Virus record (IMG/VR): IMGVR_UViG_3300036715_004471
Location: 248,001 to 312,000 of that record
Length of the DNA stretch: 64,000 nt
Direction: 5' to 3' (one strand)
Below the pieces are notes generated by a model. It made no database searches, was not told the origin of the DNA, and was given only the letters and a program-made list of their open reading frames with translations. The position numbers and the translations under genes are program-made. Shown one piece after another: positions 22,134-47,378 of the stretch (position 1 is the stretch's first letter; each line of letters starts with the position of its first letter).

Positions 22134-22889
22134 TTACCCCCTGACAACAAAAGACAAAGATTCGTATTCATTCTTAGCGAAGAACTCGTCAATGTCTTTA
22201 TAATTATCAGGTAAGTAAAAATTTTGAATATTGGCATGCTTGCCAAATTTATCTATGATGCGTTTTCTCCCCTTCTCTCCCGCTTCATCACTATCTAATA
22301 GCAAGATTATATTATCAGTGTATCTGCTAATGACGGAAAATTGATAGGCAGTCATATTAGAATTACCTAAACCGACAACATTTTTCATTCCCTTCTCATG
22401 AGCCTTGATTACATCAAATTGACCCTCTACCACATACACTAGATCATTATCTATGATAGATTGCTTATTTTCATACATTCCAAACAAATAATTACCTTTA
22501 GTAAAAACAGTATTCTTATATTTAGAAATGTTTTTAACTTTTCTTTCATTATCTGGAAGTAGCGACCTTCCAACTATAGCTACGATATTTCCATAAGCAT
22601 CCTTAAAAGGCATTACTAATGGATAATCATCGAAATATGAAAAGTTTACTGTGCGAGGATAAAGAGAATCTTCAATTTCTCTTGAGTAGAAGATTTTCGT
22701 TTCCCTAAGTGAATCTTCTCCAACCAAAGAAGTTAAAGCTTTCAAATTATGAAGATTGGGGAAATATCCAAATTGAAACTTATCCTGACTTTCAGTACTT
22801 AAACGATAGTCAAGATAAGTCTTGCAATCTTGTGCTTCTGGATAGTTATGTAGTAAAAATTGACAAGAACTAATAATTTGATCAAACAT
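22134..22889 (-). CDS. dnaG: DnaG-type primase catalytic core (no zinc-binding or helicase-binding domain)
   Basis: YL..R...F.FGYFP, IVGR, KYKNT...KGNYLFG, TOPRIM VVEGQFDVI and LDSDEAG. Confidence 0.9.
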   Translation of the reverse strand: MFDQIISSCQFLLHNYPEAQDCKTYLDYRLSTESQDKFQFGYFPNLHNLKALTSLVGEDSLRETKIFYSREIEDSLYPRTVNFSYFDDYPLVMPFKDAYGNIVAIVGRSLLPDNERKVKNISKYKNTVFTKGNYLFGMYENKQSIIDNDLVYVVEGQFDVIKAHEKGMKNVVGLGNSNMTAYQFSVISRYTDNIILLLDSDEAGEKGRKRIIDKFGKHANIQNFYLPDNYKDIDEFFAKNEYESLSFVVRG

Positions 22890-22916
22890 AAGTTAAACTT
22901 TCTTAACACTTAGGTT

Positions 22917-23261
22917 TTAGAATTCATCATTTATATTTTTAAGTTTTTCTTTCAACATATTTTTGAATGGTAGACTTAAATGATCCAACGGTTTAGAACA
23001 GGAGGCGCAAACCACGTCATCATTAATTACTTTTGGTCTACCCTCACGTTCACATTTTTTGCATTTCACAGAATATGAGAGATTTTTCTTTTGCTTAAAT
23101 TGCTTTAAATTCTTCATTTGAATTTTAGCAAAATGACTGACATTATCTATTTCTCTATCGCACAAAGAACAATATACTTTATTATCTTTATCTTTGGGAT
23201 CCAGGTATGGTTCTTGTGTTTTTCCGCATCCCTTATTTGTACAACTCATAGCAAACGGCAT
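22917..23261 (-). CDS. zinc-ribbon protein
   Basis: Four Cys pairs (CTNKGC, CSLC, CKKC, CASC). Confidence 0.7.
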   Translation of the reverse strand: MPFAMSCTNKGCGKTQEPYLDPKDKDNKVYCSLCDREIDNVSHFAKIQMKNLKQFKQKKNLSYSVKCKKCEREGRPKVINDDVVCASCSKPLDHLSLPFKNMLKEKLKNINDEF

Positions 23262-23264
23262 AAT

Positions 23265-24272
23265 TTAATCCTTATCTAAATGATCTATGTCACTTGGATC
23301 GTAAGTTTGATGACCATTCAACACATTGATTAACCTAGATATTATCTCTACATCTTCTGGATAAGTAACATCTATTATTACTTTTTGAGATCCTACACCA
23401 TTAACACCTAGGTTAGGTATCTTTATTTCATCTTTGTTTCTAGAACAAGGGGGAATTATTAATTCTTTTTCTCCCATAATGGTTTTTACTTGAACATTAA
23501 TACCCTGTAACGCATCTAGAAAAGATAGATTTAAGTGTGAAACAACATCTTGTCCTTCCAACGATAATCCTTCTTCTGGAATAACTGTTAAATGAAGGTG
23601 TGCTTCTGAATATTGATCCATGCCCATAAAGCTATTAACATAATGTCCAAAACCATTCAGCCTCAAAATGTTTCCTGACACTACGCCAGGTGGCACATTG
23701 ACACTTCCAGAAACCTGAGTACTAATAGTACCTTTCGATGAACAAGTGCGACATTGATTAATAGGGATTCTTCCAAAACATTTATCACATGTCCTGGTAA
23801 ACATCATGTTTCCCTGTTTACCAATAATTTGCCCTTTTCCTCCACACTTATCACATCCATTATTAGATTGTATCTGTCCTTGACCATTACAATCTGCACA
23901 CTTACCATTTCTGGTAAAAGAAATTTCCTTTTGACAACCCAAAATAGATTCTTTGAATGATAAGGTGATTTGAAGTACAATATGTTCTATTTGTGTCTGC
24001 TGTCTTCCTCCAAAAGGATTTATATTGATTCCAGGAAATCCTTGAAATGGATTAAACCCAGATTCTTGTATCACTGGCTCAGGATCGGTGCCTTTTCCAT
24101 TAACAACACACCGATAAGCTTCATTAATCTTTTTGAATTTATTTTCAGCACCATCTTCTTTATTAACATCAGGATGATACTTTTTAGTAAGTTCTCTATA
24201 TTTCTTTTTAGCATCTTCCGGAGAAGTTTCCGGAGATAATTCTAATATTGAATATGCTTCTTGCAAATTCAT
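23265..24272 (-). CDS. dnaJ: DnaJ chaperone (type I)
   Basis: J-domain KYHPD, G/F stretch, four CxxCxGxG-type repeats, C-terminal domain. Confidence 0.92.
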   Translation of the reverse strand: MNLQEAYSILELSPETSPEDAKKKYRELTKKYHPDVNKEDGAENKFKKINEAYRCVVNGKGTDPEPVIQESGFNPFQGFPGININPFGGRQQTQIEHIVLQITLSFKESILGCQKEISFTRNGKCADCNGQGQIQSNNGCDKCGGKGQIIGKQGNMMFTRTCDKCFGRIPINQCRTCSSKGTISTQVSGSVNVPPGVVSGNILRLNGFGHYVNSFMGMDQYSEAHLHLTVIPEEGLSLEGQDVVSHLNLSFLDALQGINVQVKTIMGEKELIIPPCSRNKDEIKIPNLGVNGVGSQKVIIDVTYPEDVEIISRLINVLNGHQTYDPSDIDHLDKD

Positions 24273-24826
24273 TTGCGTTTACCTTTAGCCTTACCTGTTA
24301 ATACAAATGCATAATACAGAGCAACGGCAATACCGTCAGCCCTATCTCTATTTTCTTCTTTTATGCCACCCTTATTCTTACCCTTAGTGATTCTCTCATA
24401 GGGAAACGTAATTCCTAAATGTTTTGCCACAAGCTCCGGCATATCTTCTTTTTTTGGCAGCACTTTAGAAGTTTTCAATCCATGTCTGATTGTCATAACA
24501 TTGAACAACCCGGGATTGGATTTCAAATAGTCATAACTAGTTAAACAAACCATACGATTGAATGTTGTCAACATTACTACAGTTGTAGCCGTACTTTTAG
24601 GCATGAATTTTATTAAATCTTCTACGCCAATATAATCTGGTTTTGATTTATTGATAATCTCCTGAATTTTATCCCTAGTATCTACTATACGATCAACTAT
24701 TGAACCTATTTTCACAGGTTTGAAATAACCCGAATCAATATACTTGATAGTGTTATCTTCTTGAATTTCTAACTCACACCATCCAATTGTCGAACTAGAC
24801 ACGTCAAAGCCAAGCACTGTCTTCAT
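24269..24826 (-). CDS. RuvC-like Holliday junction resolvase
   Basis: LGFDVSSSTIGW, IGVED, C-terminal DRADGIAVA. Confidence 0.8.
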   Translation of the reverse strand: MKTVLGFDVSSSTIGWCELEIQEDNTIKYIDSGYFKPVKIGSIVDRIVDTRDKIQEIINKSKPDYIGVEDLIKFMPKSTATTVVMLTTFNRMVCLTSYDYLKSNPGLFNVMTIRHGLKTSKVLPKKEDMPELVAKHLGITFPYERITKGKNKGGIKEENRDRADGIAVALYYAFVLTGKAKGKRK

Positions 24827-25434
24827 TTTATCTCCTTACTTTTCAAGAACGAAACAATGCTCTCTAATTCTACAAGTGTAGCATTATTTTTTATTCTGTT
24901 GGCTTTATGAGATATAACGACAATATTACCTTTAACGTATCCTTTTTCTGGAACAATACGATCCAAAGATGGCGAATCATCTTTGGTTTTTCCTACATTT
25001 GTTACAAGTAACATACCAAATATGGGACATTTACCATCGCTCGGGTAAATGTCTACTACATCTTGTTTGGTAATATCAAATATTATGCCAGAAGCTTTAG
25101 AGCGCTGTTTAGCCGAGTAATAAATAAATCTACACGGATCTTCTTGTCTTTTTTTATGTATCCATTGTTTATGAAACGCTTTGCGCTCCAGACTACTATC
25201 GTAAATACGCAGTTTTTCTTTATTCTTTTCTCTATATTCTTTATTTTTCTTACTTATATCATTTTTGTATTGTTGATAGTACTCTTTTGCTTGCGCACTT
25301 TTTGCTTCTTTCCTGCGATCATTTTGTTGACGAGCATGGGCTCGACACAAAGAACATAATTTGAAATATTCACCATTTGGCTTTGCAAATGAGGAATCAT
25401 TAAATTCTCCACGACAAGTATTACATATTCTCAT
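24823..25434 (-). CDS. HNH-variant homing-type endonuclease
   Basis: N-terminal CxxC pairs; CPIFG...SPSLDRIVPEKGYVKGNIVVISHKANRIKN. Confidence 0.75.
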   Translation of the reverse strand: MRICNTCRGEFNDSSFAKPNGEYFKLCSLCRAHARQQNDRRKEAKSAQAKEYYQQYKNDISKKNKEYREKNKEKLRIYDSSLERKAFHKQWIHKKRQEDPCRFIYYSAKQRSKASGIIFDITKQDVVDIYPSDGKCPIFGMLLVTNVGKTKDDSPSLDRIVPEKGYVKGNIVVISHKANRIKNNATLVELESIVSFLKSKEIK

Positions 25435-25486
25435 GTCTGAATGATATAATATTGGTAGAAGTTTCGGCAAATATTACTATAGGTTA

Positions 25487-25494
25487 ATATATCA
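25487..25494 (-). promoter_or_regulatory. TGATATAT putative extended -10 element
   Basis: Directly after the SSB terminator, upstream of the endonuclease-ruvC-dnaJ run. Confidence 0.45.
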
Positions 25495-25496
25495 GG

Positions 25497-25537
25497 AAAA
25501 AGAAAAAGGGGTCCTGAGTTCGCTCAGGACCCCCTTT
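25497..25537 (-). terminator. rho-independent terminator after SSB gene
   Basis: Minus strand GGGGTCCTGAG-CGAA-CTCAGGACCCC followed by TTTTTCTTTTT. Confidence 0.9.
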
Positions 25538-25557
25538 GATGTTATTGTATCAGTTGA

Positions 25558-26283
25558 TTATGCTTGGTTATCATAATCTGGAAATGATTCTTCTAATTCT
25601 TCATCATCTGCCATGCTTACTGGAGCTGTTTTAGTGTTAGCTTTTACAACTGGTTTAGCAGCCGCCTTTTTTGCTGCTGCCGGAGCGGCAGTTGGAATAG
25701 CTTCGCCCTCACCAAAAATCTTATCCAATCTCTTTTGGACAACATCTGAAGTTGGAGGAGTTACTCTACGCTTCAAATCATCAAAGTCAACATCATCTTT
25801 GACCTTTTGATCTTCTGCCGAAAGAGGCTCTTTTGGAATTGGTTGTACTGAGTAATAACCAGTAGCTCCACCGTTTTTATCAACTACGATGTTAAGATCG
25901 TACTTGGTAGGATCGCCCCAACGGTCAGCTTTTCTGGCTAGTTTTCTAATTTGAGAGAAAACCGCAAAGGAAACATCCAAAATCTTGTAAGTACCAGTCT
26001 TACGGCTCAAGACACCATACAACCAACGAAGCTTGGCTTTATCACCAGAGGCACAAACAGGGCAGCTACCGTGAATGGCTGAGCATGGAACCTTTTGACC
26101 AAAATCTTTTGGATTTGAAGGGTCTTTCTTCACCTTATGTACAGAATATTGGAATGGATTGGTTAGCAATCTTAATTCGTTATCACCTTCATCCAATCTC
26201 ATGAAGAGGTCTTTGGAATTGGTGGTCTTTTTGTCACTGTAAATCTCGTCGTTATAAGAAATTTCACCGAATGTTGATGTCAT
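25558..26283 (-). CDS. single-stranded DNA-binding protein (T4 gp32-like)
   Basis: LDEGDNELRLL, C..IHGSCPVC zinc site, YKILDV, GDPTKYDL, acidic aromatic tail. Confidence 0.7.
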   Translation of the reverse strand: MTSTFGEISYNDEIYSDKKTTNSKDLFMRLDEGDNELRLLTNPFQYSVHKVKKDPSNPKDFGQKVPCSAIHGSCPVCASGDKAKLRWLYGVLSRKTGTYKILDVSFAVFSQIRKLARKADRWGDPTKYDLNIVVDKNGGATGYYSVQPIPKEPLSAEDQKVKDDVDFDDLKRRVTPPTSDVVQKRLDKIFGEGEAIPTAAPAAAKKAAAKPVVKANTKTAPVSMADDEELEESFPDYDNQA

Positions 26284-26365
26284 TTTGATCTCCTACTGTT
26301 ATCTATTTTGTACAAAACGTACTTGTTTCTTTTTAACACATTGATCGTATTTACGACCTTATCAA

Positions 26366-26671
26366 TTATCTTGATGCAAACTTGACGAAGCGGGTACGAG
26401 TACGATCGTTAGCTCTTCCGAATCTAACTGATACGCCTCTTGTGCGTAATCTATTTGCTATCCTATTTATAACCACTCTTAGTGCACTTGGCGAACCAGG
26501 GAGGTTATTTACTTTTGTCTGACTTCTGTTGTAAACTCTAGCTAGAATAGAGTCTAATTGTGTCATTGTGCCTCTCCAATTATGAGAGGTCTCAAGTGAC
26601 CTTAGAACGCCTTCTAGAACCAAGTTATCAACCGAATTTGTCTTACCATTAGATGTCATTTTATTGCTCAC
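26366..26671 (-). CDS. small basic hypothetical protein
   Basis: Arg-rich 101-aa ORF. Confidence 0.6.
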   Translation of the reverse strand: MSNKMTSNGKTNSVDNLVLEGVLRSLETSHNWRGTMTQLDSILARVYNRSQTKVNNLPGSPSALRVVINRIANRLRTRGVSVRFGRANDRTRTRFVKFASR

Positions 26672-26684
26672 TTTCCTATTTTTA

Positions 26685-27104
26685 TTACCAAAAAGCTTTC
26701 AAATTATTGAATCTTTTTATCAACTCTGGATCACAGAGTCCTAATGCAACATGCCTGTAATCCGCATAATCACATTCTTGATAGTTATCTGCAATTGCTA
26801 ACGTTTTGCCTTCCGAAATATCTCTTGTAAAAATTACGTTAGCGCCCCAAATACTTATGTTTTTATTGACGGTAATATTAACTTCTTCAAACATCGAAGA
26901 AACTTCTATTATTTGAATGGGATTCATTACCCAATAATCAACTACTAAGTCCCACCTATCAACTAGCATTTTGGTTTCGATTAAAAATCTTTTGAATCCC
27001 TTTTTATAATCTAATCCATTTGTATAATTATACAGAGTAATACTGTTTGTAGATTTGGTTTCGGCAGCTTCCAGCAAGATGCCGAGGTCTTTCAATACAT
27101 CCAT
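26685..27104 (-). CDS. hypothetical protein ending ...IKRFNNLKAFW
   Basis: Shared C-terminal AFW motif. Confidence 0.7.
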   Translation of the reverse strand: MDVLKDLGILLEAAETKSTNSITLYNYTNGLDYKKGFKRFLIETKMLVDRWDLVVDYWVMNPIQIIEVSSMFEEVNITVNKNISIWGANVIFTRDISEGKTLAIADNYQECDYADYRHVALGLCDPELIKRFNNLKAFW

Positions 27105-27106
27105 AA

Positions 27107-27427
27107 TTATTTTTGCTTAAATACCAGGCTGCGCATGTACGAGATTTTGTGCCACGGTACCAATACCTCCAATATTAAGTCTTTGGGGGTGGAAGTCAAG
27201 ATGTCGACAAAGTTTTTTATTATCTCGTCCTCCGTCGAATCAGAAAAAATTCCTTTAACCTGCACAAAACCCTGTAAAAGCTCCGGTTTATCCAGAGTAA
27301 TGAATTTTTTTACATTCTTATTCTTAGAAGAATCATCCATAATAATCAAATAGGACGGCTTCTTAGCTATGGCAACTGTACCCATTAATCCAGTTACTTG
27401 TATTGCAATATCACTAGGTCCTGACAT
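27107..27427 (-). CDS. hypothetical protein
   Basis: TAATG-coupled to recA. Confidence 0.65.
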   Translation of the reverse strand: MSGPSDIAIQVTGLMGTVAIAKKPSYLIIMDDSSKNKNVKKFITLDKPELLQGFVQVKGIFSDSTEDEIIKNFVDILTSTPKDLILEVLVPWHKISYMRSLVFKQK

Positions 27428-28623
27428 TATGATTTAGCCTTTCTTCCTCTTTTTTTAGGTTCTGAAGAATCATCTTCAACTTCATCAATTGCTTTTTGCA
27501 ATTTAGCGGCAGCTTGTTCAAGAAGCTTTAATTCCCACTTTGTGTTACGGGCTTCCGCAATTTTGTCTGCCAATTCTTGAGCTAAATCAGTGTCTTCTTT
27601 CAAGGCATCACAAAACTTATTATAACCTACCCACTTATGCTCGCCATATTCATGGGTAACTGAAGATGTTTTTGATACTACGCCATAATCAACAGATAAT
27701 TGTGCAATTTCTTCGTGCCTATCAATAACACCAATACCAAAATCAATTCTAAACTCGCACTTGCGTGGCCAAGGTCCAAATTTCGACTTTTCAATCGTAG
27801 CTCTTATGGTTTGACCAATCTTGTTTTCTTTTTCATCCAAAATACGAGCATCAGCACGATTGACTGGTTCAAAATATACGTTAGCACTCAAAAAATGTGC
27901 GTAAGTGTTACCACCAGAATATGTATGATCTGATGCGTATGGATCCATATTAGCTTTCTTGTGATTGATAATAATAAATGGAACCTTAGCCTTATTTACT
28001 TCCAAGGAAAGCTTACGGAAAGTGGTAGTCAAGAATCTTGCTAAAAGCGCCATATTCATTTTACCAACAGCAGAAATATCTTCTCCTGGAGGTATAATAG
28101 ATCCCAAAGAATCCAATACAATTAAGTTAATGTTGAAGTCGCCAGAAGCTACCTTATCCAATAACCCTTCTTTTGATTTACCTTTCAAAATATGTGTCTT
28201 GGTATCTTCTTTCGGAACACCCAAAACCATTTCAAAACACTTACGACCATTTACAGCCGTATCACCTTCTACAAGAATAATCTTAGTAGTATCTAAGCCA
28301 AGTGATGCTGCCCAAGTAGGATCAAACGTTTGTTCCGCGTCAATGAATACCTGTTGAGCTGATGGATCTTCTATTTGTGCTTCTTTGATAGCAATCATTG
28401 CCATCAACGTTTTACCGCTACCTGGCGCGCCATAAAACTGAATCAATCTTCCCTTAGGGAGACCGCCAGAAGATAGGGCGTCATCTAATAGTAAGGAACC
28501 AGAAGAAATTGCTGGAACCTTTTGACCCACAGTTTCATGAGCCATTCTGAAATCTAATTGTTCGTCTGAATCTGCAAAACTTTTGAAAAAGGCATCTAAT
28601 TTATTCGACATTTTATCTCCCAT
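27427..28623 (-). CDS. recA: RecA-family recombinase
   Basis: Walker A GAPGSGKT, FIDAEQ, Walker B IVLDS, IEKSKFGP; insertion before Walker B; basic tail KKRGRK. Confidence 0.93.
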   Translation of the reverse strand: MGDKMSNKLDAFFKSFADSDEQLDFRMAHETVGQKVPAISSGSLLLDDALSSGGLPKGRLIQFYGAPGSGKTLMAMIAIKEAQIEDPSAQQVFIDAEQTFDPTWAASLGLDTTKIILVEGDTAVNGRKCFEMVLGVPKEDTKTHILKGKSKEGLLDKVASGDFNINLIVLDSLGSIIPPGEDISAVGKMNMALLARFLTTTFRKLSLEVNKAKVPFIIINHKKANMDPYASDHTYSGGNTYAHFLSANVYFEPVNRADARILDEKENKIGQTIRATIEKSKFGPWPRKCEFRIDFGIGVIDRHEEIAQLSVDYGVVSKTSSVTHEYGEHKWVGYNKFCDALKEDTDLAQELADKIAEARNTKWELKLLEQAAAKLQKAIDEVEDDSSEPKKRGRKAKS

Positions 28624-29138
28624 TATTCGTAGCCTTCGGGAATTTTCTCCGTTGTTGTGGCGCCAAGACTATATCCAAGGATCGTCTTTCTGAGCCCGCT
28701 AGCAATATCTTTGAAATGATGATGAGATTTTATTAAAATCTCGTATTTTCTTTCCAATACTAACTTGCTGCCTTTAGCTTTTGCTAATTTTATTTGCACC
28801 GCTTCAACTTCTGGAGAAGATTCGCCAGCCCACTTTTTCATGTCCGCCGTAGTTCTAGAACCGTCGGGCGCATGATACTCTAATGATACTTTGTTTTTTG
28901 TACTGTTTACTTTTGCTTCTAAATAACCTACTGTTTTTACTATTTTCCCTAGATATCCCGTAATAACATCGGCGCCTCGTAAAGCCTGTTGTTGTAACAG
29001 TTCTGCGTGAGACAAATCTATTGCGTCAATATCTTGTAATTTCTCCAACACTAATTGAATTTCTGTTAGGTCGAAATTTGAAAAATCTTCTTCCAATTCA
29101 GATCCCATAAAATCCGAAAGTCTTACTTGTTGGCTCAT
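28623..29138 (-). CDS. helical protein, possible UvsY-like recombination mediator
   Basis: Coiled-coil protein coupled to recA; assignment by position and pattern only. Confidence 0.35.
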   Translation of the reverse strand: MSQQVRLSDFMGSELEEDFSNFDLTEIQLVLEKLQDIDAIDLSHAELLQQQALRGADVITGYLGKIVKTVGYLEAKVNSTKNKVSLEYHAPDGSRTTADMKKWAGESSPEVEAVQIKLAKAKGSKLVLERKYEILIKSHHHFKDIASGLRKTILGYSLGATTTEKIPEGYE

Positions 29139-29187
29139 ATTCTTTCCTTCTTAATCAATGTACAATATCTAACTATGTCTCGACAAA

Positions 29188-29487
29188 TTACTTCTTAATT
29201 TTTTCTTTAATCTGATCACATAAATCATCAATTTGAGCGTGCATTAATCTCAAATGTTGATGTTGCATCAAAGACATTAAGAACAAAAATACTTCGAAGG
29301 AAGTTTGTCTTTTAGAAGGAGGTTTCAAAAAAATGATAATTCCATTATTATCCACCTCAAATAAATCGATAAATAAGTCTTCTCCCTTGTTGGTGCCTAT
29401 TGTATAAGATTTAGCGATCTTCTCATACATTAACCACTCATCCTGGGTCATGTCAACCTTTTTATTATCTATGATTCTAAAAGACAT
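29188..29487 (-). CDS. hypothetical protein
   Basis: 99-aa ORF. Confidence 0.7.
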   Translation of the reverse strand: MSFRIIDNKKVDMTQDEWLMYEKIAKSYTIGTNKGEDLFIDLFEVDNNGIIIFLKPPSKRQTSFEVFLFLMSLMQHQHLRLMHAQIDDLCDQIKEKIKK

Positions 29488-29496
29488 TTTTAACCT

Positions 29497-30333
29497 TTAT
29501 GCTCTGGAGAAACCGCCGCCGCCCGATAAGAAATTCTTTCTGGAACCGGATACTCTATTCTGTAATTGTTGCAATTTTGCTAAATCAGCTTGAGATCCTT
29601 TGCCACCACTCTGTGCCATATTAGCCATTCTTAAAACAGATGCTGGAATTTCATCTTCTCCAGTGAATTCTGAATCAGGAAGCGCCGAATTAATCATATC
29701 GCCGCCGCCAATCATAGCTTGCATTTCTGCAACAGCACTAGGATCTGCTGACTCCATCATTTCTGGAGAAATGATTCCTGCCATTCCAGATTGGTTAACA
29801 ACGGTAGCGCCTTCTCTTCTAATTTGTTGTGCCATAGCCTTAAGATGTTGAGTCTTTTCAGTAACACTCTTGAAACCTTCGATATTTGGCTTAACAGCTT
29901 CGGCTCTACTATAAAATCCATTGGTTTTTTCTTCTGACTGAATTTTTTCAGCTACAATTTCTTGTTCACCAGCCTCAGTAGTTACCTTAACCTTGAATTT
30001 TTTGTTTTTACGTTTTTCAAAATCTTCCGTATCTAAATCAAGACCTTGCTTGAATTTTTCAACGGCTTCTTGTTTTAGAGAATCAAAATATTCTTGAGGA
30101 ATATAAGAAGCTAATTTATCAGAAGTTGTTTTGATGTAATTATGATTGGATAACATCCAATCATCTAATTGGTCCTGATAAGGAGTTAAATCGTCCATAG
30201 TATCACACAATGATGAAAATAATTCTTTCAATTCTTCATCCATTATGAATCTGCCACAGAAGGGGCACGTATTAATATCAATAGCGTGTTTCCATTTTGG
30301 ATCTATTTGCATTTCACAAGATATACACTTCAT
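29497..30333 (-). CDS. hypothetical protein with N-terminal zinc ribbon
   Basis: MKCISC...CPFC. Confidence 0.7.
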   Translation of the reverse strand: MKCISCEMQIDPKWKHAIDINTCPFCGRFIMDEELKELFSSLCDTMDDLTPYQDQLDDWMLSNHNYIKTTSDKLASYIPQEYFDSLKQEAVEKFKQGLDLDTEDFEKRKNKKFKVKVTTEAGEQEIVAEKIQSEEKTNGFYSRAEAVKPNIEGFKSVTEKTQHLKAMAQQIRREGATVVNQSGMAGIISPEMMESADPSAVAEMQAMIGGGDMINSALPDSEFTGEDEIPASVLRMANMAQSGGKGSQADLAKLQQLQNRVSGSRKNFLSGGGGFSRA

Positions 30334-30334
30334 A

Positions 30335-31015
30335 TTAATCCTTAACACTCAATACCTTCTGAGCATGTTTAACTATAGAGAAGAATATATCTCTTTTCTT
30401 ATTTTCCGCACGTGTTTTTATGAATGCAACTTTATCCTGCACCTTTTCTTTCCAAGTTTTCTTAACTGGCGGTGGTGGAGGCGCCTCTAATTGTTTCAAC
30501 AAAGCTTTAGTTATGGCATTGATATTTTGCAAAGCTTCTTGACGATGTTTTTTATTTTCATCCACAGCAATCTCCGTTGCGACAACGTTTCTTTCATAAG
30601 ATACCCCAGTCCTGTTAATACCTGACTGACAAGATCCATTAAATTGCTTAAAATGCTTATCAAGATGAGCTTTGGTATGAGGATTTAATTTGATTTTGTT
30701 TTTTTCTACCTCTTTGCTGGCTTTTTCTCTTACTTCGCGTAAATATTGATTACGAGTTTCCGCCTCATCATTAACAACTGGAACTGTTACATATACAGGC
30801 TCATCAACAGATTCAACACTATTTTCTAAAGCTTCAATATTGTAATCATTAAACTCACTATCATGTCTTTTAGTTACTTCTCTGGCTAGTTCCATTACTT
30901 TCTCTATAGACTCTTCTAACCTAAGAAGTTTGACAGGATCTTCTTCAAATTCAGACGCATCCACTTCAATTACAAATCCATCTTCATCAACACTTAAGAT
31001 TTTCTCATCACTCAT
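30335..31015 (-). CDS. acidic/coiled-coil hypothetical protein
   Basis: 226-aa ORF. Confidence 0.7.
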   Translation of the reverse strand: MSDEKILSVDEDGFVIEVDASEFEEDPVKLLRLEESIEKVMELAREVTKRHDSEFNDYNIEALENSVESVDEPVYVTVPVVNDEAETRNQYLREVREKASKEVEKNKIKLNPHTKAHLDKHFKQFNGSCQSGINRTGVSYERNVVATEIAVDENKKHRQEALQNINAITKALLKQLEAPPPPPVKKTWKEKVQDKVAFIKTRAENKKRDIFFSIVKHAQKVLSVKD

Positions 31016-31026
31016 AAATCTCCCAA

Positions 31027-36602: not shown

Positions 36603-36605
36603 GAA

Positions 36606-36851: not shown

Positions 36852-36855
36852 ATAA

Positions 36856-37808: not shown

Positions 37809-37814
37809 TGTTAT

Positions 37815-38141
37815 TTACTTATCTGAAATGTCCACACCCTTACCTTCAAGTAAAAATAATGCATACTTGATTTTTGCCATCTGAACTTTAGCAGCATCAC
37901 GATAAGGGGCTTCTAATTCCTTCTTGATTTCCTTAGCAGCATTTAACTTAATGTCGCCTTCTTTTTCTTTTTCTATTGTATAAATATTGCCTTCACAAGT
38001 CACAATGATCTTTTTCAATGATTCTGGACTGGCTGCATCAGCGGAATCTTTAAACTCAGGTATATCTTTAATTACCTTAGCCCACTTCTCTGGAAAAGCA
38101 AACATCTCATTATCGGCGCTATCATTTTGTTTCTTACTCAT
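37815..38141 (-). CDS. hypothetical helical protein
   Basis: 108-aa ORF. Confidence 0.7.
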   Translation of the reverse strand: MSKKQNDSADNEMFAFPEKWAKVIKDIPEFKDSADAASPESLKKIIVTCEGNIYTIEKEKEGDIKLNAAKEIKKELEAPYRDAAKVQMAKIKYALFLLEGKGVDISDK

Positions 38142-38152
38142 TTTATTCTTCC

Positions 38153-39400
38153 TTATTCAACAATATTAATCTTCTTAGCGATGAAATCCAATGCGTATTC
38201 ATCTTTGATTCTAGAGAATAGAATTTGTAAATAACCAGTTCTATTCATCTCTTTAATTGCATTATCTACTGAATCTTTTGTTTGAGTTTTCATTAAATTC
38301 TGTTTGATGACTTCAAACACTTCTTGATCTGTAATTTGTGCATCTAGTTCAGATTCTCTTACTTTATCCAAGATAAGAGCCAATTTTACATTTTTTTCTG
38401 CAATTTCAATGTATCTTTGTTTATCTTCTTCTGCCATGGCGTCCCAATCAGCCTTAGCATTATGTACTAAGTATTGAGCCTCTGACAAACTTAACCAATT
38501 TGGAACAGTGAAGTTATTATCAGCTACCAAACGAGCAGAAATAGCCTCTATGATTTGCATTTTGAAATTATTTGTCATTCTAGTCATTGACATACCATTG
38601 ACATGCTCTCTTAATTCTGCAAAATCTTTCTTGCCTAATTTGTGCGCCAGAGTATCATCTAATGGACACGGCTCCGTTTTTGAACCCATATTCAAAGTGA
38701 CTTTGAAATGAAGAGTCTTGCCAGCTAAAGATGGTAAACCATGTTCTGGAACTACCAAATCAAATTCTCTAGTTTCTCCCAATGTCATACCAACCAAACT
38801 GTCATCAAAATTCATTAATTGGCTGCGACCAACAGTTAACATCTCACCTTCGGCGGAAAGATTGTTAATCTTTTTTCCGTCGAGAGTTCCCTCATAGTCT
38901 ATAATGATATTGTCGCCAGGTTGAACCGTGTCACTTTCGGTATATGGAGAGACTTCACCAAACTTAACTCTAAGTTCTTGAAGTAACTTTTCGGCAAAAT
39001 CAACTTCTGTAGTATCAGAGTGTGGTTTTGGAATATCCATTCCCACATAAGAAGCTAATGTAAAATCTGGCTTAACATGAATTTCAAATTCACATGTGAA
39101 TTTGCCATCTGCCATCAAAACAGACTTAAACAGAGGGGCGCCGTGTGGTCTTAATTTCTTTTCGAAAATGGTATTGTGATACGCATCTTCTGCTAAACCT
39201 CTTTTTAGAGACTCTTCTATTTGGGATCTATAATGCATCTTAATAGCATCTAAAGATCCTTTACCGGGTCTAAATCCGGGAACAGGAGCTTTCTTAAAAG
39301 CTTGTAGAACTTGACCACGTTTGTCTAGAATTTCTCCAGCATCAGCCACATATTGTATGCTTAACTTGCATGACTCTAGCTCTTTAACTTCGATTTCCAT
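38153..39400 (-). CDS. tig: trigger factor
   Basis: Ribosome-binding loop VPGFRPGK, FKBP-like domain (GDNIIIDYEG), C-terminal domain; AGAGGA before ATG 39400. Confidence 0.92.
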   Translation of the reverse strand: MEIEVKELESCKLSIQYVADAGEILDKRGQVLQAFKKAPVPGFRPGKGSLDAIKMHYRSQIEESLKRGLAEDAYHNTIFEKKLRPHGAPLFKSVLMADGKFTCEFEIHVKPDFTLASYVGMDIPKPHSDTTEVDFAEKLLQELRVKFGEVSPYTESDTVQPGDNIIIDYEGTLDGKKINNLSAEGEMLTVGRSQLMNFDDSLVGMTLGETREFDLVVPEHGLPSLAGKTLHFKVTLNMGSKTEPCPLDDTLAHKLGKKDFAELREHVNGMSMTRMTNNFKMQIIEAISARLVADNNFTVPNWLSLSEAQYLVHNAKADWDAMAEEDKQRYIEIAEKNVKLALILDKVRESELDAQITDQEVFEVIKQNLMKTQTKDSVDNAIKEMNRTGYLQILFSRIKDEYALDFIAKKINIVE

Positions 39401-39427
39401 ATTTCCTCTTACCAAAATGTCTTTAAC

Positions 39428-40216
39428 TTAACCGTATGTTACTTCGCCATAAATATTCTGACCATAAGATTTAGCTTTGCCCTCTGGACAAAGATTCAAA
39501 TAATCGCAGAAATTACATAGAGCCGTTGGATTAGGCATATATTCTTTTTCTGTTAAAATCTGTTCAGCATATTCAAGATACTTATCTTGAATTTTCATAA
39601 TCTCTGGAACGGCGAATTCTGTAGTAATATATTCAAAATCATGTCTGAGCAAAATGTAAGATGCTCTAACTTTCTCAATTGAAGGATCTTCCGAAATTAT
39701 AACATAGGCATATGTTAACAATTGGAAAAAATCGTCTTTCAAGTATTTTTTATTTTTGACCGTCTTATAGTCGCAGACATGCACTACACCATCGTCATCG
39801 ATCTGGATTCTGTCAATCATCCCATTTAAGATAATTTTACCATCCACTAAAAATTCGAAATTCTTTTCGCACGCAATTACGTTGGCGGACAAATTATTTT
39901 TTTTATCTGTGGTAACAATCTTTAAATATTGATCAATAATCTTCCAACAATCCTTCTTCATCTCTGGAGTCATAGCTGACTTATATTCTACTACAGCATC
40001 TTTGAAAGATTTGGACATAACTACACTATAAGCTTCCTGAGAACCATTAAGATAAGCATTGTGAAAATCCTCTAATACCTTATGACAAAACTTTCCAAAG
40101 GTATGGAATTCCCAATCTTTTCTTGGCAATTTCTCAACATAAGCATACTTAAACTTAGCCTTACAATCCAAAAATGTTTTTGTTTTGGATACGGACAATC
40201 TTAATTCATTTGACAT
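39428..40216 (-). CDS. PD-(D/E)XK exonuclease with 4-Cys Fe-S ligands (AddB/Cas4-like)
   Basis: LSVSK..FLDCKAKF, GMIDRI, CDYKT, CNFCDYLNLCP. Confidence 0.85.
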   Translation of the reverse strand: MSNELRLSVSKTKTFLDCKAKFKYAYVEKLPRKDWEFHTFGKFCHKVLEDFHNAYLNGSQEAYSVVMSKSFKDAVVEYKSAMTPEMKKDCWKIIDQYLKIVTTDKKNNLSANVIACEKNFEFLVDGKIILNGMIDRIQIDDDGVVHVCDYKTVKNKKYLKDDFFQLLTYAYVIISEDPSIEKVRASYILLRHDFEYITTEFAVPEIMKIQDKYLEYAEQILTEKEYMPNPTALCNFCDYLNLCPEGKAKSYGQNIYGEVTYG

Positions 40217-43357: not shown

Positions 43358-45565
43358 TTACCAACTATTAACTACTCTGGCTTTAGATATCATATTAAGA
43401 TCTTGCTCAACTAAAATACCATTAGCAAATTTGTTTTTTAATCTATCATTGTGTGTAATAACTAGAATTGTAAAATCTTTCTGGAAAAACTTTACAATAT
43501 CGGCAAATGAATCTACGCTGGCTTTATCTAAAGATTGATCAATCTCATCTAATAATAGCAGCTTGATATTAGTTCCAAATATATCTTGTAAAAGATAATT
43601 CAACCCAATTTTTAAACTAAAAGTCACAGCTAGCTTCATTGCTCCGGAAAGTTGTTCATAATACCTATCTTTACCATTCACATGGTAATGAATATCCAAA
43701 GTATCTGATTCTGTGCCATCCCCCTTTGTCTTTTCGATAAAAAAAGATAACTGTAATCCAGGTCTCAATTTATTCAACAAATCATTAGCTTTTAATTGTA
43801 AATCATCCAATACATTTTGTATTATCAGATTTGGAATTCCCGTGGTAGAAAATGCCTGTATCACGTTTGGGTACATAGCATGTTTCTTTTCTAAATCTTG
43901 CAATCTAATTTTCAAACTATTCATTCGAACTATTTCTTTATTCTTTTGTTCGATGTTATGCTTGATCACAGCCCTGGAAGCTGTCAAATGCGCAATTTCT
44001 TTGTTTAGAGAGGCAATTTCAGAATTTGTCCCAACGATCTTTGACCTCTGAGTATCTATGCGCGTCATGATTTCATTAGCTTCAGAAATGGATGACATAG
44101 CAATCATTGCTTTAATCTCATCTAATTCAGACAATTTATTATTCAAATCGTCCAAAAACTTATCATACAAACCAGAATAATCTGCATGAAGATTCTTTTT
44201 ATCTTGCAACTCTTTATTTTTAAGCGTAAGCTTATTGTTCAATTCATCTAATTGTTGCTTAGATCGTGTTAAAGAATTCATCTTTAATTGATAATTATTA
44301 ACTTCTCCATTGAGAAGTGCGATTTCTTTTTTCGCCACAGCAATATTGTGTTGACATTTTTCCATATTCTTAGCAACTTGCTCTAAGCAAACTTTCTTAT
44401 GTTCTTGTGTCATTGGCTGACGACAATGTTTGCATACGCTATCATCTGGAAATGGAATTTTCAAATCTTCATAATCAGCAATATTATTCTGCACCGAAAC
44501 ATTTAGATATGCCAATTTTTGTTTATGCTCGCTAATTTGTTCGGCTAAAGAATTGATTTCAGAAAAATCTATCTCACTTAAACTATTAGATAGTTCTTTA
44601 GATTTCTTTACCTCATCTATTAGTTCTTTTGCCTGCTTAACGGCAGCATTCTTTTTGCCTTGATAATCTTTTACTGATAATTCTAATCTTGATTTTTCTA
44701 CCAAAAGAACTTTTTCTTTTTCTATCAGAGATATGGATTTACTTTCCAAATCTTTATGAGTACGCAACAATTCGCTTAATTCACTGTTCAGCAGTGTTAA
44801 ATTTGCTGTTGGAGATTCTAGTGTTTTAATCAAAGATTCTATCTTAGTCTCTACTTCTAGAGACTGTTCTTGAAGCTCTTCTAGATCAACACCTGCGGAC
44901 ATTAGAGAATCAATCAATATTTTATGTTTATCTATTTCTTTTACCAAAACAGAAGAACGGTCTTTTGCTATTTTTTCCAGTTTTGAATAAATAGCAAGAT
45001 TCAAAGCGTCCTTAAAAAGGGCTTTTCTTTTTTCCGGAGTAGATGTAGTTAAACCTGAAAAATCATTTTGCACAAAATGCACGATACTTCTAAAGGTTTT
45101 GAAGTTAATCTTGATTAACTTTTCTAATTCTTTTTCTGTATCGGCTGCGCGGCGACCAGAAATATCCTTCCAGAATTTGTCATCTGATATCGGATCAGAT
45201 TTCAGATCGTGATATACTTCTATTTCGGAACCAACAACGGAATTTCTTTGTAAAAGAGTTAAATCAGTACTACCTTTTTTTGTTCTTTTACGAATTATTC
45301 TATATTCCTGCTCACCAATTAAAAAATCAAAAGTGATCATACAAATATTTGCATCATCTCTGATGATTTTTTCTAGATTGACATCTGCTTGATTAAAAAG
45401 AACATATTCTATAGCCTTAAAAATAGATGATTTACCTACACCATTAGAGAAAGAATCATTATTTTCCATTTTGCCGACAATTAGAGCCGATTGGAATTGA
45501 GAAAAATCCACAAAACTCTTTTCGTGACACATGAAGTTTTCAATGTATAATTTTGACGGAATCAT
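43358..45565 (-). CDS. sbcC: SbcC/Rad50 (gp46-like) ATPase
   Basis: NGVGKSS, coiled coil with zinc hook CKHC, signature LSGAM, LLLDE, ITHN. Confidence 0.92.
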   Translation of the reverse strand: MIPSKLYIENFMCHEKSFVDFSQFQSALIVGKMENNDSFSNGVGKSSIFKAIEYVLFNQADVNLEKIIRDDANICMITFDFLIGEQEYRIIRKRTKKGSTDLTLLQRNSVVGSEIEVYHDLKSDPISDDKFWKDISGRRAADTEKELEKLIKINFKTFRSIVHFVQNDFSGLTTSTPEKRKALFKDALNLAIYSKLEKIAKDRSSVLVKEIDKHKILIDSLMSAGVDLEELQEQSLEVETKIESLIKTLESPTANLTLLNSELSELLRTHKDLESKSISLIEKEKVLLVEKSRLELSVKDYQGKKNAAVKQAKELIDEVKKSKELSNSLSEIDFSEINSLAEQISEHKQKLAYLNVSVQNNIADYEDLKIPFPDDSVCKHCRQPMTQEHKKVCLEQVAKNMEKCQHNIAVAKKEIALLNGEVNNYQLKMNSLTRSKQQLDELNNKLTLKNKELQDKKNLHADYSGLYDKFLDDLNNKLSELDEIKAMIAMSSISEANEIMTRIDTQRSKIVGTNSEIASLNKEIAHLTASRAVIKHNIEQKNKEIVRMNSLKIRLQDLEKKHAMYPNVIQAFSTTGIPNLIIQNVLDDLQLKANDLLNKLRPGLQLSFFIEKTKGDGTESDTLDIHYHVNGKDRYYEQLSGAMKLAVTFSLKIGLNYLLQDIFGTNIKLLLLDEIDQSLDKASVDSFADIVKFFQKDFTILVITHNDRLKNKFANGILVEQDLNMISKARVVNSW

Positions 45566-46761
45566 TCCTTACCCTCGGATTTGAATGTCTGATAAATTTC
45601 CATTGCCAAATTAATAAACTCATCTTTCTGGGAAGGATGAATATAAGTTTCACCATATTTATTGATGGCAATAGGTACGTCCATTTTAGTATTCAAAGTA
45701 TTGGAAGTGTCCTTCTTTATAAGAACAGCTTTTTTAGACTCTGAAATGCCTGAAATATTGAATGCCCCCTGTGAAGTAAGGTATTTCTCAACTTTTGATT
45801 TATCAATTGATTTAAGATCAGATGATTCGAGTGCAATATCCACTTTAACAATAGATTTGTCCCACGTTTCTTCTAAGCTTTTAATTTGTGATAAAACATA
45901 AGCTGTTGTGTCTTTTGTATCTTTTGGTACAGAAATCGTAACTTTCTTCAAAGCACGTGTTGGAAGATATTGAGTTGTAAATTCCTTATCAGAATTCGTA
46001 TCTAACAAAACTATATATTTCTTTTGATCCGTTTCACCAAAATTAGAAATATCCATACTGCCAATATGGGCAACATACGGGTTATTCTTATTCATGACTT
46101 GAGGTTTATGAACATGACCCATCCAAACGTAATCATATCCTTTAAACATTTCAATTGGACAGAACAATTCATTGGTAATGTCATCAATTTCATCGCCAAC
46201 AGGTATAGAACCCTCTATTGCTAAATGTCCAATCAATACTTTTTTATAGGTCTTTGGCATAGCAGCTTGCTCATAAATCAAGCTATCTTGCAAAAGAGCA
46301 ATTGCTGCCTGATTTGATGGTGTTCCAAAAGATTTACGATCTCTGAACGGAACAAAAGTAAAAGCAGTGGTTCCAATAACAATCGTATCTATGTTTTTGT
46401 AGACATGAATTCCATCCATTTCAGATTCACTGATAATATCTAATGGAGATGAATACACAAACCCACTACGTAACATGTCATGATTACCTAAAATCAAATG
46501 AACATGGACGTCGTTAGCTTGACATCTTTTTAACCAAGAAATAAACAATGTTATCAATGCGGGATGTGGGCGAGGATCTTCGAAAATATCTCCAGTCACA
46601 ACGATATGCTCAGAAGATGATTCTACTGCTTGATCCAAAGTCCAATCAAGAAGATTAAGTTGATCAGCAATGCGACTATTTAAGTTTGAACCGATACCAG
46701 TTTTACCAATATTGACCCCTTTACCCAAATGTACATCGCCTAAAATTATAACATTGGACAT
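45562..46761 (-). CDS. sbcD: SbcD/Mre11 (gp47-like) nuclease
   Basis: GDVHLG, GDIFE, GNHD, GHL, GHVH. Confidence 0.92.
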   Translation of the reverse strand: MSNVIILGDVHLGKGVNIGKTGIGSNLNSRIADQLNLLDWTLDQAVESSSEHIVVTGDIFEDPRPHPALITLFISWLKRCQANDVHVHLILGNHDMLRSGFVYSSPLDIISESEMDGIHVYKNIDTIVIGTTAFTFVPFRDRKSFGTPSNQAAIALLQDSLIYEQAAMPKTYKKVLIGHLAIEGSIPVGDEIDDITNELFCPIEMFKGYDYVWMGHVHKPQVMNKNNPYVAHIGSMDISNFGETDQKKYIVLLDTNSDKEFTTQYLPTRALKKVTISVPKDTKDTTAYVLSQIKSLEETWDKSIVKVDIALESSDLKSIDKSKVEKYLTSQGAFNISGISESKKAVLIKKDTSNTLNTKMDVPIAINKYGETYIHPSQKDEFINLAMEIYQTFKSEGKE

Positions 46762-47378
46762 GGTACGTAATCTTTTATACTTTCTTTGAGTTGATCAACT
46801 ACTGAACGTAAAGCTTCATTATTAAGATTGTGCTTCGCATTTATAGTGTCATATACCATGCAGATATCTTCGATAAATGTACGTGATTTTTCATCATTAT
46901 TAAGTTGTCTAAAACTTCGTACACCATTTGAGAAATTCAACATAATCTCTAATTTTTCAGAGAAGTTATCCCTATCAATCACAACGGCATCTTCATCAGA
47001 ATCAGACTTAAAAATATCCAATATCTTGTATGCCGCTTTTACTCTAGATATTTTGTCCATGTTGGATACAAAATCACAACATCTTACCCCTGTTTTGCAA
47101 CCAAAACACCAAAAACTATTTGTTTGTGGATAAAAATAAAAGGAGGGCGAATTTTCTCGTCCTCCTTTATGAGATGAAAAGGGGCAGATTACTTTTCTAT
47201 TCTGTTCATCTAGCCTTAAACCATACAATTTAAATAGTTTAGTTAGGGGAACTGAATCTGCCCTTTTGATTAAGTCTTGGTAAAACTTCTTTCCTGCAAC
47301 AGTTTCTGAAGAGTTTCCATAATACCGAGATGTTTCGCTATCGCTAACGGATCCTGAACTATCTGATAATTTGTACAT
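46746..47378 (-). CDS. CHC2 (DnaG-type) zinc-binding domain plus unknown helical domain
   Basis: CPFSSH...NSPSF......FWCFGC...DFV. Confidence 0.85.
   Translation of the reverse strand: MYKLSDSSGSVSDSETSRYYGNSSETVAGKKFYQDLIKRADSVPLTKLFKLYGLRLDEQNRKVICPFSSHKGGRENSPSFYFYPQTNSFWCFGCKTGVRCCDFVSNMDKISRVKAAYKILDIFKSDSDEDAVVIDRDNFSEKLEIMLNFSNGVRSFRQLNNDEKSRTFIEDICMVYDTINAKHNLNNEALRSVVDQLKESIKDYVPCPML

What the first reader, a model, noticed from the sequence alone, without database searches (positions are those of the whole stretch)
22134..47378. Split DnaG primase: catalytic core and CHC2 zinc finger about 24 kb apart
Seen: 22134-22889 is only the catalytic/TOPRIM core, while 46746-47378 is a DnaG-type CHC2 finger fused to a different helical domain and overlaps sbcD. 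Known: primase zinc-binding domains recognise the priming site and can act in trans (T7 gp4). Inference: a two-subunit primase, possibly tied to SbcCD for recombination-dependent replication.
Basis: partly seen in the sequence, partly recalled or inferred. Interest (0 to 1): 0.6.

Follow-up and report, generated by a model that had tools for sequence, protein, structure and literature searches.

The report
Two-gene DnaG primase of huge phages
In this 446-kb phage and all its relatives the DnaG-type primase is encoded as two separate conserved genes about 24 kb apart, a catalytic core and a zinc-finger protein, which most likely work together as a two-subunit primase; a similar split has been noted in passing in other jumbo phages but never tested.

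Summary
Window 22134-22889(-) encodes a 251-aa DnaG catalytic core (N-subdomain plus TOPRIM) with intact catalytic residues but no zinc finger and no helicase-binding domain. Window 46746-47378(-) encodes a 210-aa protein with a CHC2 DnaG zinc-binding domain and a conserved three-helix bundle; it overlaps sbcD by 16 nt. The window lies in a 446.5-kb phage record that holds exactly one copy of each half and no recognisable archaeo-eukaryotic-type primase. The split is old and stable. All 80 related viral loci have a stand-alone core, and all 15 large records tested carry one core and one finger 21-29 kb apart. Both genes are under purifying selection, and some finger homologues carry an intein at the zinc knuckle. 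A rate-covariation test was uninformative. The link to SbcCD rests on conserved gene order alone, inside a module that is syntenic throughout. A two-zinc-ribbon protein always sits directly upstream of the core and is an untested rival partner. Iyer et al. 2021 already noted stand-alone primase zinc ribbons in T4-like jumbo phages, so this is a new variant of a known kind.

The parts
22134..22889 (-). DnaG primase catalytic core (RNA-polymerase domain: N-subdomain plus TOPRIM), 251 aa. It has no zinc finger, no C-terminal helical subdomain and no helicase-binding domain.
   Evidence: Pfam DNAG_N and Toprim_2. phrog_6444 positions 131-359 of 577. Aligns to Aquifex DnaG 112-342. Invariant R108, K123, Y124, N126, E155, G156, D199, D201, D232 and D234 in 51 homologues. 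dN/dS 0.03-0.18.
46746..47378 (-). Finger protein, 210 aa: disordered N-terminus, CHC2 DnaG-type zinc-binding domain and C-terminal three-helix bundle.
   Evidence: Pfam Zn_ribbon_DnaG E 3.4e-10. AF2 model with mean pLDDT 77. dN/dS 0.09-0.27. More than 130 homologues of about 205 aa.
46995..47285 (-). Zinc-binding domain of the finger (residues 32-128). The CHC2 ligands are C65, H70, C91 and C94.
   Evidence: Ligands invariant in 60 sequences. VIA-align Z 9.1 to 2au3 residues 1-93 and Z 8.5 to 1d0q.
46773..46973 (-). Three-helix bundle of the finger (residues 136-202), specific to this family. D177 is invariant.
   Evidence: pLDDT about 90. A profile search of 1.84 billion proteins found it almost only at the C-terminus of finger proteins of about 200 aa, and never in a full-length DnaG. 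Only generic helical-bundle fold matches. No Pfam family.
45562..46761 (-). SbcD/Mre11-like nuclease. Its start codon lies 16 nt inside the finger gene.
   Evidence: Pfam Metallophos, phrog_100. Directly downstream of the finger in 16 of 16 genomes.
43358..45565 (-). SbcC/Rad50-like ABC ATPase.
   Evidence: Pfam AAA_23 and SMC_N, phrog_77 E 6e-73.
22917..23261 (-). p114, a 114-aa protein with two C4 zinc ribbons directly upstream of the core. It is a rival candidate partner of the core.
   Evidence: Seven Cys invariant and the eighth (C88) nearly so in 46 homologues. Upstream of the core in 74 of 80 loci. No family or fold assignment.
47453..47947 (-). up164, a conserved protein of unknown function directly upstream of the finger.
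   Evidence: Synteny up164-finger-sbcD-sbcC in 10 of 10 loci. No Pfam or PHROG family.
24269..40216 (-). Replication and recombination genes lying between the two primase halves: RuvC-like resolvase 24269-24826, endonuclease VII/HNH 24823-25470, SSB-like 25558-26283, RecA 27427-28623, Pol III alpha 32031-35546 and PD-(D/E)XK nuclease 39428-40216. Chaperone genes are interspersed.
   Evidence: Pfam and PHROGs.

Best explanation
The phage's only DnaG-type primase is encoded as two polypeptides. One is a minimal catalytic RNA-polymerase domain (core, 251 aa). The other is a separate CHC2 zinc-binding protein (finger, 210 aa). Shown: both genes are intact, single-copy, under purifying selection, and co-inherited across a large clade of roughly 360-490 kb phages. 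Inferred: at the fork the finger's zinc-binding domain recognises the template initiation site and hands it to the core in trans. This is what the zinc-binding domain of one bacterial DnaG does for the catalytic domain of another. The two proteins would be brought together either by the finger's family-specific three-helix bundle or by separate docking of each half on the phage DnaB-like helicase, as in the T4 primosome. The position of the finger next to sbcD is read as membership of one co-expressed replication and recombination module, not as a physical partnership.
For: There is exactly one DNAG_N/Toprim_2 gene and one Zn_ribbon_DnaG gene in 446.5 kb. No Prim-Pol or AEP primase was detected. 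The catalytic residues of the core and the CHC2 ligands of the finger are invariant. Both halves best match the same full-length primase family, phrog_6444, at complementary positions 27-90 and 131-359. All 80 related viral loci have a stand-alone core of about 250 aa and no zinc-binding domain within 3 kb. All 15 large records tested have one core and one finger 21-29 kb apart, down to 25-40% identity. dN/dS is 0.03-0.27 for both genes. Two finger homologues carry an intein inserted just before the third zinc ligand, as expected for a conserved functional site. A DnaB-like helicase with an IstB/DnaC-like loader is encoded elsewhere in the genome. From the literature: zinc-binding and catalytic domains of separate DnaG molecules cooperate in trans (PMC2978363). 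The zinc-binding and catalytic domains of T4 gp61 each bind the helicase through their own motif. Stand-alone primase-type zinc ribbons accompany DnaG-like primases in T4-like jumbo phages (PMC7824862).
Against: There is no direct evidence of interaction. Rate covariation between finger and core, corrected for shared phylogeny, was weak (partial r 0.19, permutation p 0.17). It was no better than finger-sbcD (0.26) and weaker than core-p114 (0.54) or core-DnaJ (0.59). The two genes are never adjacent. Each has its own tightly conserved neighbours: finger with sbcD, core with p114. Because the whole module is syntenic, co-occurrence within one clade is not independent evidence. The three-helix bundle has no identifiable relative, so its docking role is a guess. 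No expression data exist.
Confidence: 0.6

Rival explanations
1. The finger is an accessory subunit of the phage SbcCD (Mre11/Rad50-like) nuclease. It would be a single-stranded-DNA or DNA-end binding module, perhaps coupling end processing to priming in recombination-dependent replication. The core would obtain template recognition from elsewhere.
For: sbcD lies directly downstream of the finger in 16 of 16 genomes, down to 25% finger identity. Stop and start overlap or abut in 11 of them. RecA, a RuvC-like resolvase and a PD-(D/E)XK nuclease lie in the same module. In an unrelated small Helicobacter phage a full-length primase gene is also followed by sbcC.
Against: In 5 of 16 genomes 170-760 bp are inserted between the two genes, including decayed homing-endonuclease pieces, so translational coupling is dispensable. 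The entire 22-47 kb module is syntenic across the clade, so adjacency is not specific. By established knowledge, CHC2 DnaG-type zinc-binding domains are known only from primases and their relatives. SbcCD is reported as nearly universal in jumbo phages without such a partner being described (PMC7824862). Finger-sbcD rate covariation was not significant.
Confidence: 0.12
2. The functional partner of the core is p114, the two-zinc-ribbon protein encoded directly upstream, or the core primes with the helicase alone. The CHC2 finger would then have a separate role, such as regulating primer length or interfering with the host primase or helicase.
For: p114 sits immediately upstream of the core in 74 of 80 loci. 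Seven of its eight Cys are invariant and the eighth is nearly so. Core-p114 residual rate covariation was the strongest of the pairs tested that involve a primase half and a non-chaperone neighbour (partial r 0.54, p 0.005). By my own knowledge, the T7 primase uses a Cys4 zinc ribbon, so a C4 ribbon can serve a DnaG-type core.
Against: p114 has no detectable sequence or fold similarity to any primase zinc-binding domain. Its best hits are weak matches to ribosomal eL34 and to the RNA polymerase I subunit A12.2, with E above 1e-3 or Foldseek E above 0.1. Covariation of adjacent genes is expected from shared recombination history, and core-DnaJ is equally high. This reading leaves a bona fide, strongly conserved primase zinc-binding domain without a catalytic domain to serve.
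Confidence: 0.15
3. One of the two genes is a decaying remnant of a disrupted full-length dnaG and has no function.
For: The finger looks like an N-terminal DnaG fragment. BLASTP against a full-length Helicobacter phage primase runs from the zinc-binding domain through the three-helix bundle into the start of DNAG_N.
Against: dN/dS is 0.03-0.27 and the catalytic and zinc-ligand residues are invariant. Hundreds of intact homologues of constant length exist, down to 25-40% identity, and an intein is maintained in the finger.
Confidence: 0.02

Closest known systems
Stand-alone primase-type zinc ribbon plus DnaG-like primase of T4-like ('group 2') jumbo phages (Iyer et al. 2021, Viruses 13:63, PMC7824862)
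   Same: A DnaG Toprim primase is accompanied by a separately encoded primase-type zinc ribbon in a very large phage genome.
   Different: That report is a single sentence of comparative genomics, with no architecture, context or test. The present clade is not group 2: it has Pol III alpha and no family B polymerase hit. The finger carries an extra conserved three-helix bundle, is fixed next to sbcD, and has no close match in 50,697 deposited phage records; its best hits there are zinc-binding domains of full-length primases at about 25-39% identity.
Bacterial DnaG primase (E. coli, Aquifex, Geobacillus, S. aureus)
   Same: It has a homologous CHC2 zinc-binding domain and a homologous catalytic domain with the same catalytic residues. 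In DnaG the zinc-binding domain of one molecule acts in trans on the catalytic domain of another (PMC2978363).
   Different: DnaG is a single chain of three modules: zinc-binding, catalytic and helicase-binding. Here the first two are separate genes 24 kb apart. The C-terminal helical subdomain of the catalytic domain and the helicase-binding domain are absent from both proteins.
Phage T4 gp61 and T7 gp4 primases
   Same: These are minimal phage-type catalytic domains without a bacterial helicase-binding domain. In T4 the zinc-binding and catalytic domains each dock on the helicase through their own motif, which makes a covalent link conceptually dispensable. The gp61 zinc-binding domain is a weak structural match to the finger (Z 4.3-4.5).
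   Different: In T4 and T7 the two domains are joined by a linker that is proposed to set primer length. Here there is no linker.
'Fractured genes' joined by split inteins (Dassa et al. 2009, PMC2677866)
   Same: A replication gene is found in two pieces in a phage-like genome, and inteins occur in this family.
   Different: Neither half carries an intein fragment at the break. Pfam finds none in either, the finger ends in a helical bundle, and the core starts directly with DnaG-homologous sequence. The inteins seen in homologues are complete and lie inside the zinc-binding domain, not at the split.

Membership tests
DnaG-type (Toprim) primase | Catalytic RNA-polymerase domain: DNAG_N subdomain plus TOPRIM fold with the conserved Glu and DxD acidic residues | tested here: met
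   Pfam DNAG_N and Toprim_2 are over their cut-offs. E155, D199, D201, D232, D234 and K123-Y124-x-N126 are invariant. The profile aligns to 2au3 residues 112-342 at E 7e-30.
DnaG-type (Toprim) primase | N-terminal CHC2 zinc-binding domain on the same polypeptide as the catalytic domain | tested here: not met
   The core starts at the catalytic domain. The only Zn_ribbon_DnaG in the genome is in a separate gene 24 kb away. The same holds in 80 of 80 related loci.
[quoted passage not shown]
   Neither protein has a Pfam helicase-binding or helicase domain. The core ends about 5 residues after the TOPRIM match, and its profile alignment stops about 60 residues short of the end of the Aquifex zinc-binding-plus-catalytic construct.
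DnaG-type (Toprim) primase | Template-directed synthesis of short RNA primers | not testable with these tools
   This needs a biochemical assay.
Two-subunit (zinc-binding domain in trans) primase | Physical or functional interaction of finger and core | tested here: inconclusive
Evolutionary rate covariation was not significant (partial r 0.19, p 0.17). Co-occurrence was 15 of 15, but within one syntenic clade.
Stand-alone primase zinc ribbon plus DnaG-like primase of group 2 jumbo phages (Iyer et al. 2021) | Separately encoded primase-type zinc ribbon co-occurring with a DnaG Toprim protein | tested here: met
   description in PMC7824862.
Stand-alone primase zinc ribbon plus DnaG-like primase of group 2 jumbo phages (Iyer et al. 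2021) | Group 2 hallmarks: family B DNA polymerase and gp23-type capsid protein | tested here: not met
   There is no DNA_pol_B hit in 446.5 kb, and the replicative polymerase is Pol III alpha. The Gp23 search found nothing, but its control was silent too, so that part is inconclusive.
Split-intein 'fractured gene' | N- and C-intein fragments at the ends of the two gene pieces | tested here: not met
   Neither protein has an intein domain. The finger's C-terminus is a helical bundle. Inteins in homologues P0281 and P0344 are contiguous and internal to the zinc-binding domain.
SbcCD accessory factor | Binding to or modulation of SbcCD | not tested
   Only gene order is available. The single complex-prediction job could not be run.

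The most novel reading that the evidence does not exclude
The finger is a shared adaptor rather than a simple primase subunit. Its three-helix bundle would dock on SbcCD (or on the neighbouring up164 protein) at processed DNA ends, while its zinc-binding domain recruits the catalytic core. Priming would then be physically coupled to end resection, starting recombination-dependent replication. That would explain why the primase was split and why the finger has stayed fixed to sbcD over the whole history of the clade.
Probability: 0.1. Interest if true: 0.8.

Novelty: new variant of a known kind. Interest (0 to 1): 0.45.

Why it matters
DnaG zinc-binding domains are thought to work in trans on a neighbouring catalytic domain, and the linker between them has been proposed to set primer length. 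A natural, ancient and widespread primase whose two domains are separate proteins would allow several direct tests. One is whether the covalent link is dispensable. Another is how primer length is then set. A third is what replaces the tether, be it the family-specific three-helix bundle or the helicase. It also marks a large, uncultured clade of roughly 360-490 kb phages from aquatic and microbial-mat samples that replicate with Pol III alpha. It gives annotators a rule for these genomes: a 'CHC2 zinc finger protein' next to sbcD is probably half of the primase.

Tried and rejected

2. Is the finger's three-helix bundle the missing C-terminal helical subdomain of the DnaG catalytic domain? 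This is not supported. A profile of the bundle finds no DnaG among PDB sequences. Among 1.84 billion proteins it finds only finger-type proteins. Fold matches are generic three-helix bundles such as Hsp70 lids and designed proteins, Z about 7. By my own knowledge, minimal phage catalytic domains (T7, T4) lack that subdomain anyway.

3. Does the bundle derive from the first helices of the catalytic domain? There are only weak hints. The HMMER alignment to Aquifex DnaG and the BLASTP alignment to a Helicobacter phage primase both run on past the zinc-binding domain. However, hhalign of the bundle against the core family gives probability 0.1.

4. Split-intein trans-splicing of the two halves: rejected.

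5. Evolutionary rate covariation on 13-15 genomes: uninformative. It is dominated by gene adjacency.

6. Identity of p114: Pfam, PHROGs, a PDB profile search, an AF2 model and Foldseek gave nothing reliable.

7. Atlas look-alikes of the bundle: only generic helical proteins.

8. Expression: no RNA runs hold the locus.

9. Close relatives among 50,697 deposited phage genomes: none. The best core hits are about 24-33% identical full-length primases.
Full report
**What is there**

The window is G000:C1:248001-312000 of a 446,541-bp IMG/VR virus record. The GC content is about 34% and nearly all genes are on the minus strand. A gpA-type large terminase, Pol III alpha, RecA, SbcCD and a topoisomerase show that it is a very large phage.

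ORF 22134-22889(-) encodes a 251-aa protein. It matches Pfam DNAG_N (residues 18-141) and Toprim_2 (152-236) and nothing else. Its family profile aligns to Aquifex DnaG residues 112-342 (E 7e-30). That covers the N-subdomain and the TOPRIM fold of the RNA-polymerase domain. It does not cover the zinc-binding domain, the last ~60 residues of the crystallised zinc-binding-plus-catalytic construct, or a helicase-binding domain.

ORF 46746-47378(-) encodes a 210-aa protein with Pfam Zn_ribbon_DnaG at residues 32-128 (E 3.4e-10). The AlphaFold model has mean pLDDT 77. It shows a disordered N-terminus (1-28), the zinc-binding domain (29-122), a short linker and a confident three-helix bundle (136-202). 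The zinc-binding domain superposes on the Aquifex and Bacillus DnaG zinc-binding domains at Z 9.1 and 8.5 (Foldseek). The gene's last 16 nt overlap the start of sbcD (45562-46761), which is followed by sbcC.

**Is the split real and genome-wide?**

Searches of the whole record find exactly one DNAG_N hit, one Toprim_2 hit and one Zn_ribbon_DnaG hit. They find no Prim-Pol or AEP-type primase. A DnaB-like helicase (469 aa), preceded by an IstB/DnaC-like ATPase, is encoded about 107 kb away. This pair of genes is therefore the only recognisable primase equipment of the phage.

**How old and how stable is it?**

The core family has more than 700 clusters at 90% identity, all about 250 aa with the same Pfam content. 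The finger family has more than 130 such clusters, all about 205 aa.

- In 80 of 80 related viral loci (38-72% identity) the core is a stand-alone ORF with no zinc-binding domain within 3 kb. It sits in the conserved order DnaJ - p114 - core - sigma-region-4-like p160.
- In all 15 large records examined there is one core and one finger, 21-29 kb apart on the same strand. This holds down to 25-40% finger identity.
- Pairwise dN/dS is 0.03-0.18 for the core and 0.09-0.27 for the finger. Both the zinc-binding domain and the bundle are constrained.
- The CHC2 ligands are invariant, as is D177 in the bundle. The catalytic residues of the core (R108, K123-Y124-x-N126, E155, D199, D201, D232, D234) are also invariant.

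Both halves best match the same full-length primase family, phrog_6444, at complementary positions 27-90 and 131-359 of 577. This fits descent from one primase gene.

Two finger homologues, P0281 and P0344, carry a complete intein. One of them has a LAGLIDADG endonuclease. The intein is inserted immediately before the third zinc ligand. By established knowledge, inteins typically settle in conserved functional sites of replication proteins.

**The three-helix bundle**

A profile of residues 129-210 was searched against 1.84 billion representative proteins. It finds 233 proteins, almost all about 200 aa, with the match at positions ~130-205. Apart from fragments, the two intein-bearing proteins and one repetitive 1,079-aa zinc-finger protein (P0319), nothing else turns up, and no full-length DnaG. 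The bundle has no Pfam family and no PDB sequence match. Its fold matches are generic.

I tested two ideas about its origin:

- **It is the missing C-terminal helical subdomain of the catalytic domain.** This is not supported.
- **It derives from the first helices of the catalytic domain.** Alignments to Aquifex DnaG and to a Helicobacter phage primase run on beyond the zinc-binding domain. However, hhalign against the core family is negative.

The origin of the bundle stays open. Its conservation suggests a protein-docking role.

**Context**

The 22-47 kb stretch between the two halves is one replication and recombination module on one strand. It holds:

- a RuvC-like resolvase
- an endonuclease VII/HNH protein
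- an SSB-like protein
- RecA
- Pol III alpha
- a PD-(D/E)XK nuclease
- SbcC and SbcD

sbcD follows the finger in 16 of 16 genomes. The stop and start codons overlap or abut in 11 of them. In the other five, 170-760 bp are inserted. In L006 the insert contains decayed pieces of a homing endonuclease with NUMOD-like motifs; this reading comes from the translated sequence and my own knowledge. Because the whole module keeps its order across the clade, this adjacency alone does not single out SbcCD as the finger's partner.

The core has its own faithful neighbour, p114. This 114-aa protein has two C4 zinc ribbons; seven of its eight Cys are invariant and the eighth is nearly so. I could not assign it to any family or fold.

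**Tests of partnership**

Binding of finger to core is therefore untested.

As a substitute I computed protein distance matrices for seven genes in 13-15 genomes and correlated them after removing the shared background.

| Pair | Partial r | Permutation p |
|---|---|---|
| finger-core | 0.19 | 0.17 |
| finger-sbcD | 0.26 | 0.16 |
| core-p114 | 0.54 | 0.005 |
| core-DnaJ | 0.59 | 0.008 |

The high values belong to adjacent genes and most likely reflect shared recombination history. The test does not discriminate between the models.

**Mechanism proposed**

Shown: two intact, conserved, single-copy genes together contain the zinc-binding domain and the catalytic domain of a DnaG primase.

Inferred: they act together, with the zinc-binding domain recognising the initiation site in trans. 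Two published results support this inference. The zinc-binding domain of one bacterial DnaG cooperates with the catalytic domain of another (PMC2978363). In the T4 primosome the two domains of gp61 each bind the helicase through their own motif (bioRxiv 10.1101/2023.05.03.539249), so a covalent link is not needed for assembly in principle. I put the two-subunit primase at about 0.6, an SbcCD-accessory role at about 0.12, a p114-core pairing with a different job for the finger at about 0.15, and a dead remnant at about 0.02.

**Comparison with what is known**

Iyer et al. 2021 (PMC7824862) state that DnaG-like primases of T4-like 'group 2' jumbo phages tend to be accompanied by a stand-alone primase-type zinc ribbon. 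The kind is therefore already on record, as one sentence of comparative genomics and without a test.

The present clade differs in several respects:

- It has Pol III alpha and no family B polymerase.
- The finger has a family-specific three-helix bundle.
- The finger is fixed next to sbcD.
- The finger family has no close relative among 50,697 deposited phage genomes.

Full-text searches for a described split DnaG primase found nothing else. I rate this a new variant of a known kind and of moderate interest. It is a natural system for testing how a primase works without the linker between the zinc-binding and catalytic domains.

**Provenance and limits**

Near-identical DNA occurs in microbial-mat, aquatic and sediment metagenomes. 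No RNA runs hold it. All functional statements are inferences from sequence, predicted structure and gene order.

Noticed in passing
P0281 and P0344 (homologues of window 46746-47378): Finger homologues of 529 and 354 aa carry a complete intein, one with a LAGLIDADG endonuclease and one a mini-intein. It is inserted immediately before the third zinc ligand of the CHC2 finger. I did not find an intein at this site described in the papers searched.
   Followed up: partly
window 22917-23261 (-): p114 is a 114-aa protein with two C4 zinc ribbons; seven of its eight Cys are invariant and the eighth is nearly so. It always sits between DnaJ and the primase core. Its family and fold are unassigned. 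A weak profile hit to ribosomal protein eL34 (E about 1e-3) may be compositional.
   Followed up: partly
window 21389-21871 (-): p160 is a sigma-70 region 4 / HTH protein just downstream of the core. It is far more conserved (about 85-95% identity) than its neighbours (about 60-70%) in the same genomes.
   Followed up: no
window 23265-24272, 35662-36327, 38153-39415, 48859-49389 (all -): The phage encodes protein-folding and maturation genes inside the replication module: a full DnaJ (J domain, CXXCXGXG and C-terminal domain), an FtsH-like M41 peptidase fragment, a trigger factor, and a peptide deformylase with a C-terminal SEC-C motif.
   Followed up: no
window 32031-35546 (-); whole record G000: The replicative polymerase is a 1171-aa Pol III alpha (PHP, alpha, finger and HHH domains). 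No family B polymerase hit was found in the 446.5-kb record, so the clade is not one of the T4-like jumbo phage groups.
   Followed up: partly
L006:10618-11326 (relative G001, between finger and sbcD): A roughly 700-bp insert holds short broken ORFs with NUMOD-like repeats and an HTH. It looks like a decayed homing endonuclease. Four other relatives have inserts of 170-760 bp at the same junction.
   Followed up: partly
L120 (Helicobacter phage COL 23-PUJ, MW247147.1 5359-8554): In this unrelated 28-kb phage the gene order is helicase, full-length DnaG primase, SbcC-like exonuclease. A primase-SbcC neighbourhood therefore exists outside the huge-phage clade and may be ancestral.
   Followed up: no
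window 47453-47947 (-): up164 is a conserved 164-aa protein of unknown function that always lies directly upstream of the finger (order up164-finger-sbcD-sbcC). It has no Pfam or PHROG family.
   Followed up: no
G000 whole record; G001: IMG/VR labels the 446.5-kb record a 'provirus'. A 452-kb relative with the same gene order has direct terminal repeats and 100% estimated completeness, so the provirus label is doubtful.
   Followed up: no
window 54635-56416, 58611-59609, 7438-9318 (all -): Three other large genes were seen: a type IA topoisomerase with a C4 zinc ribbon, an FtsK/SpoIIIE-like ATPase, and a gpA-type large terminase.
   Followed up: no
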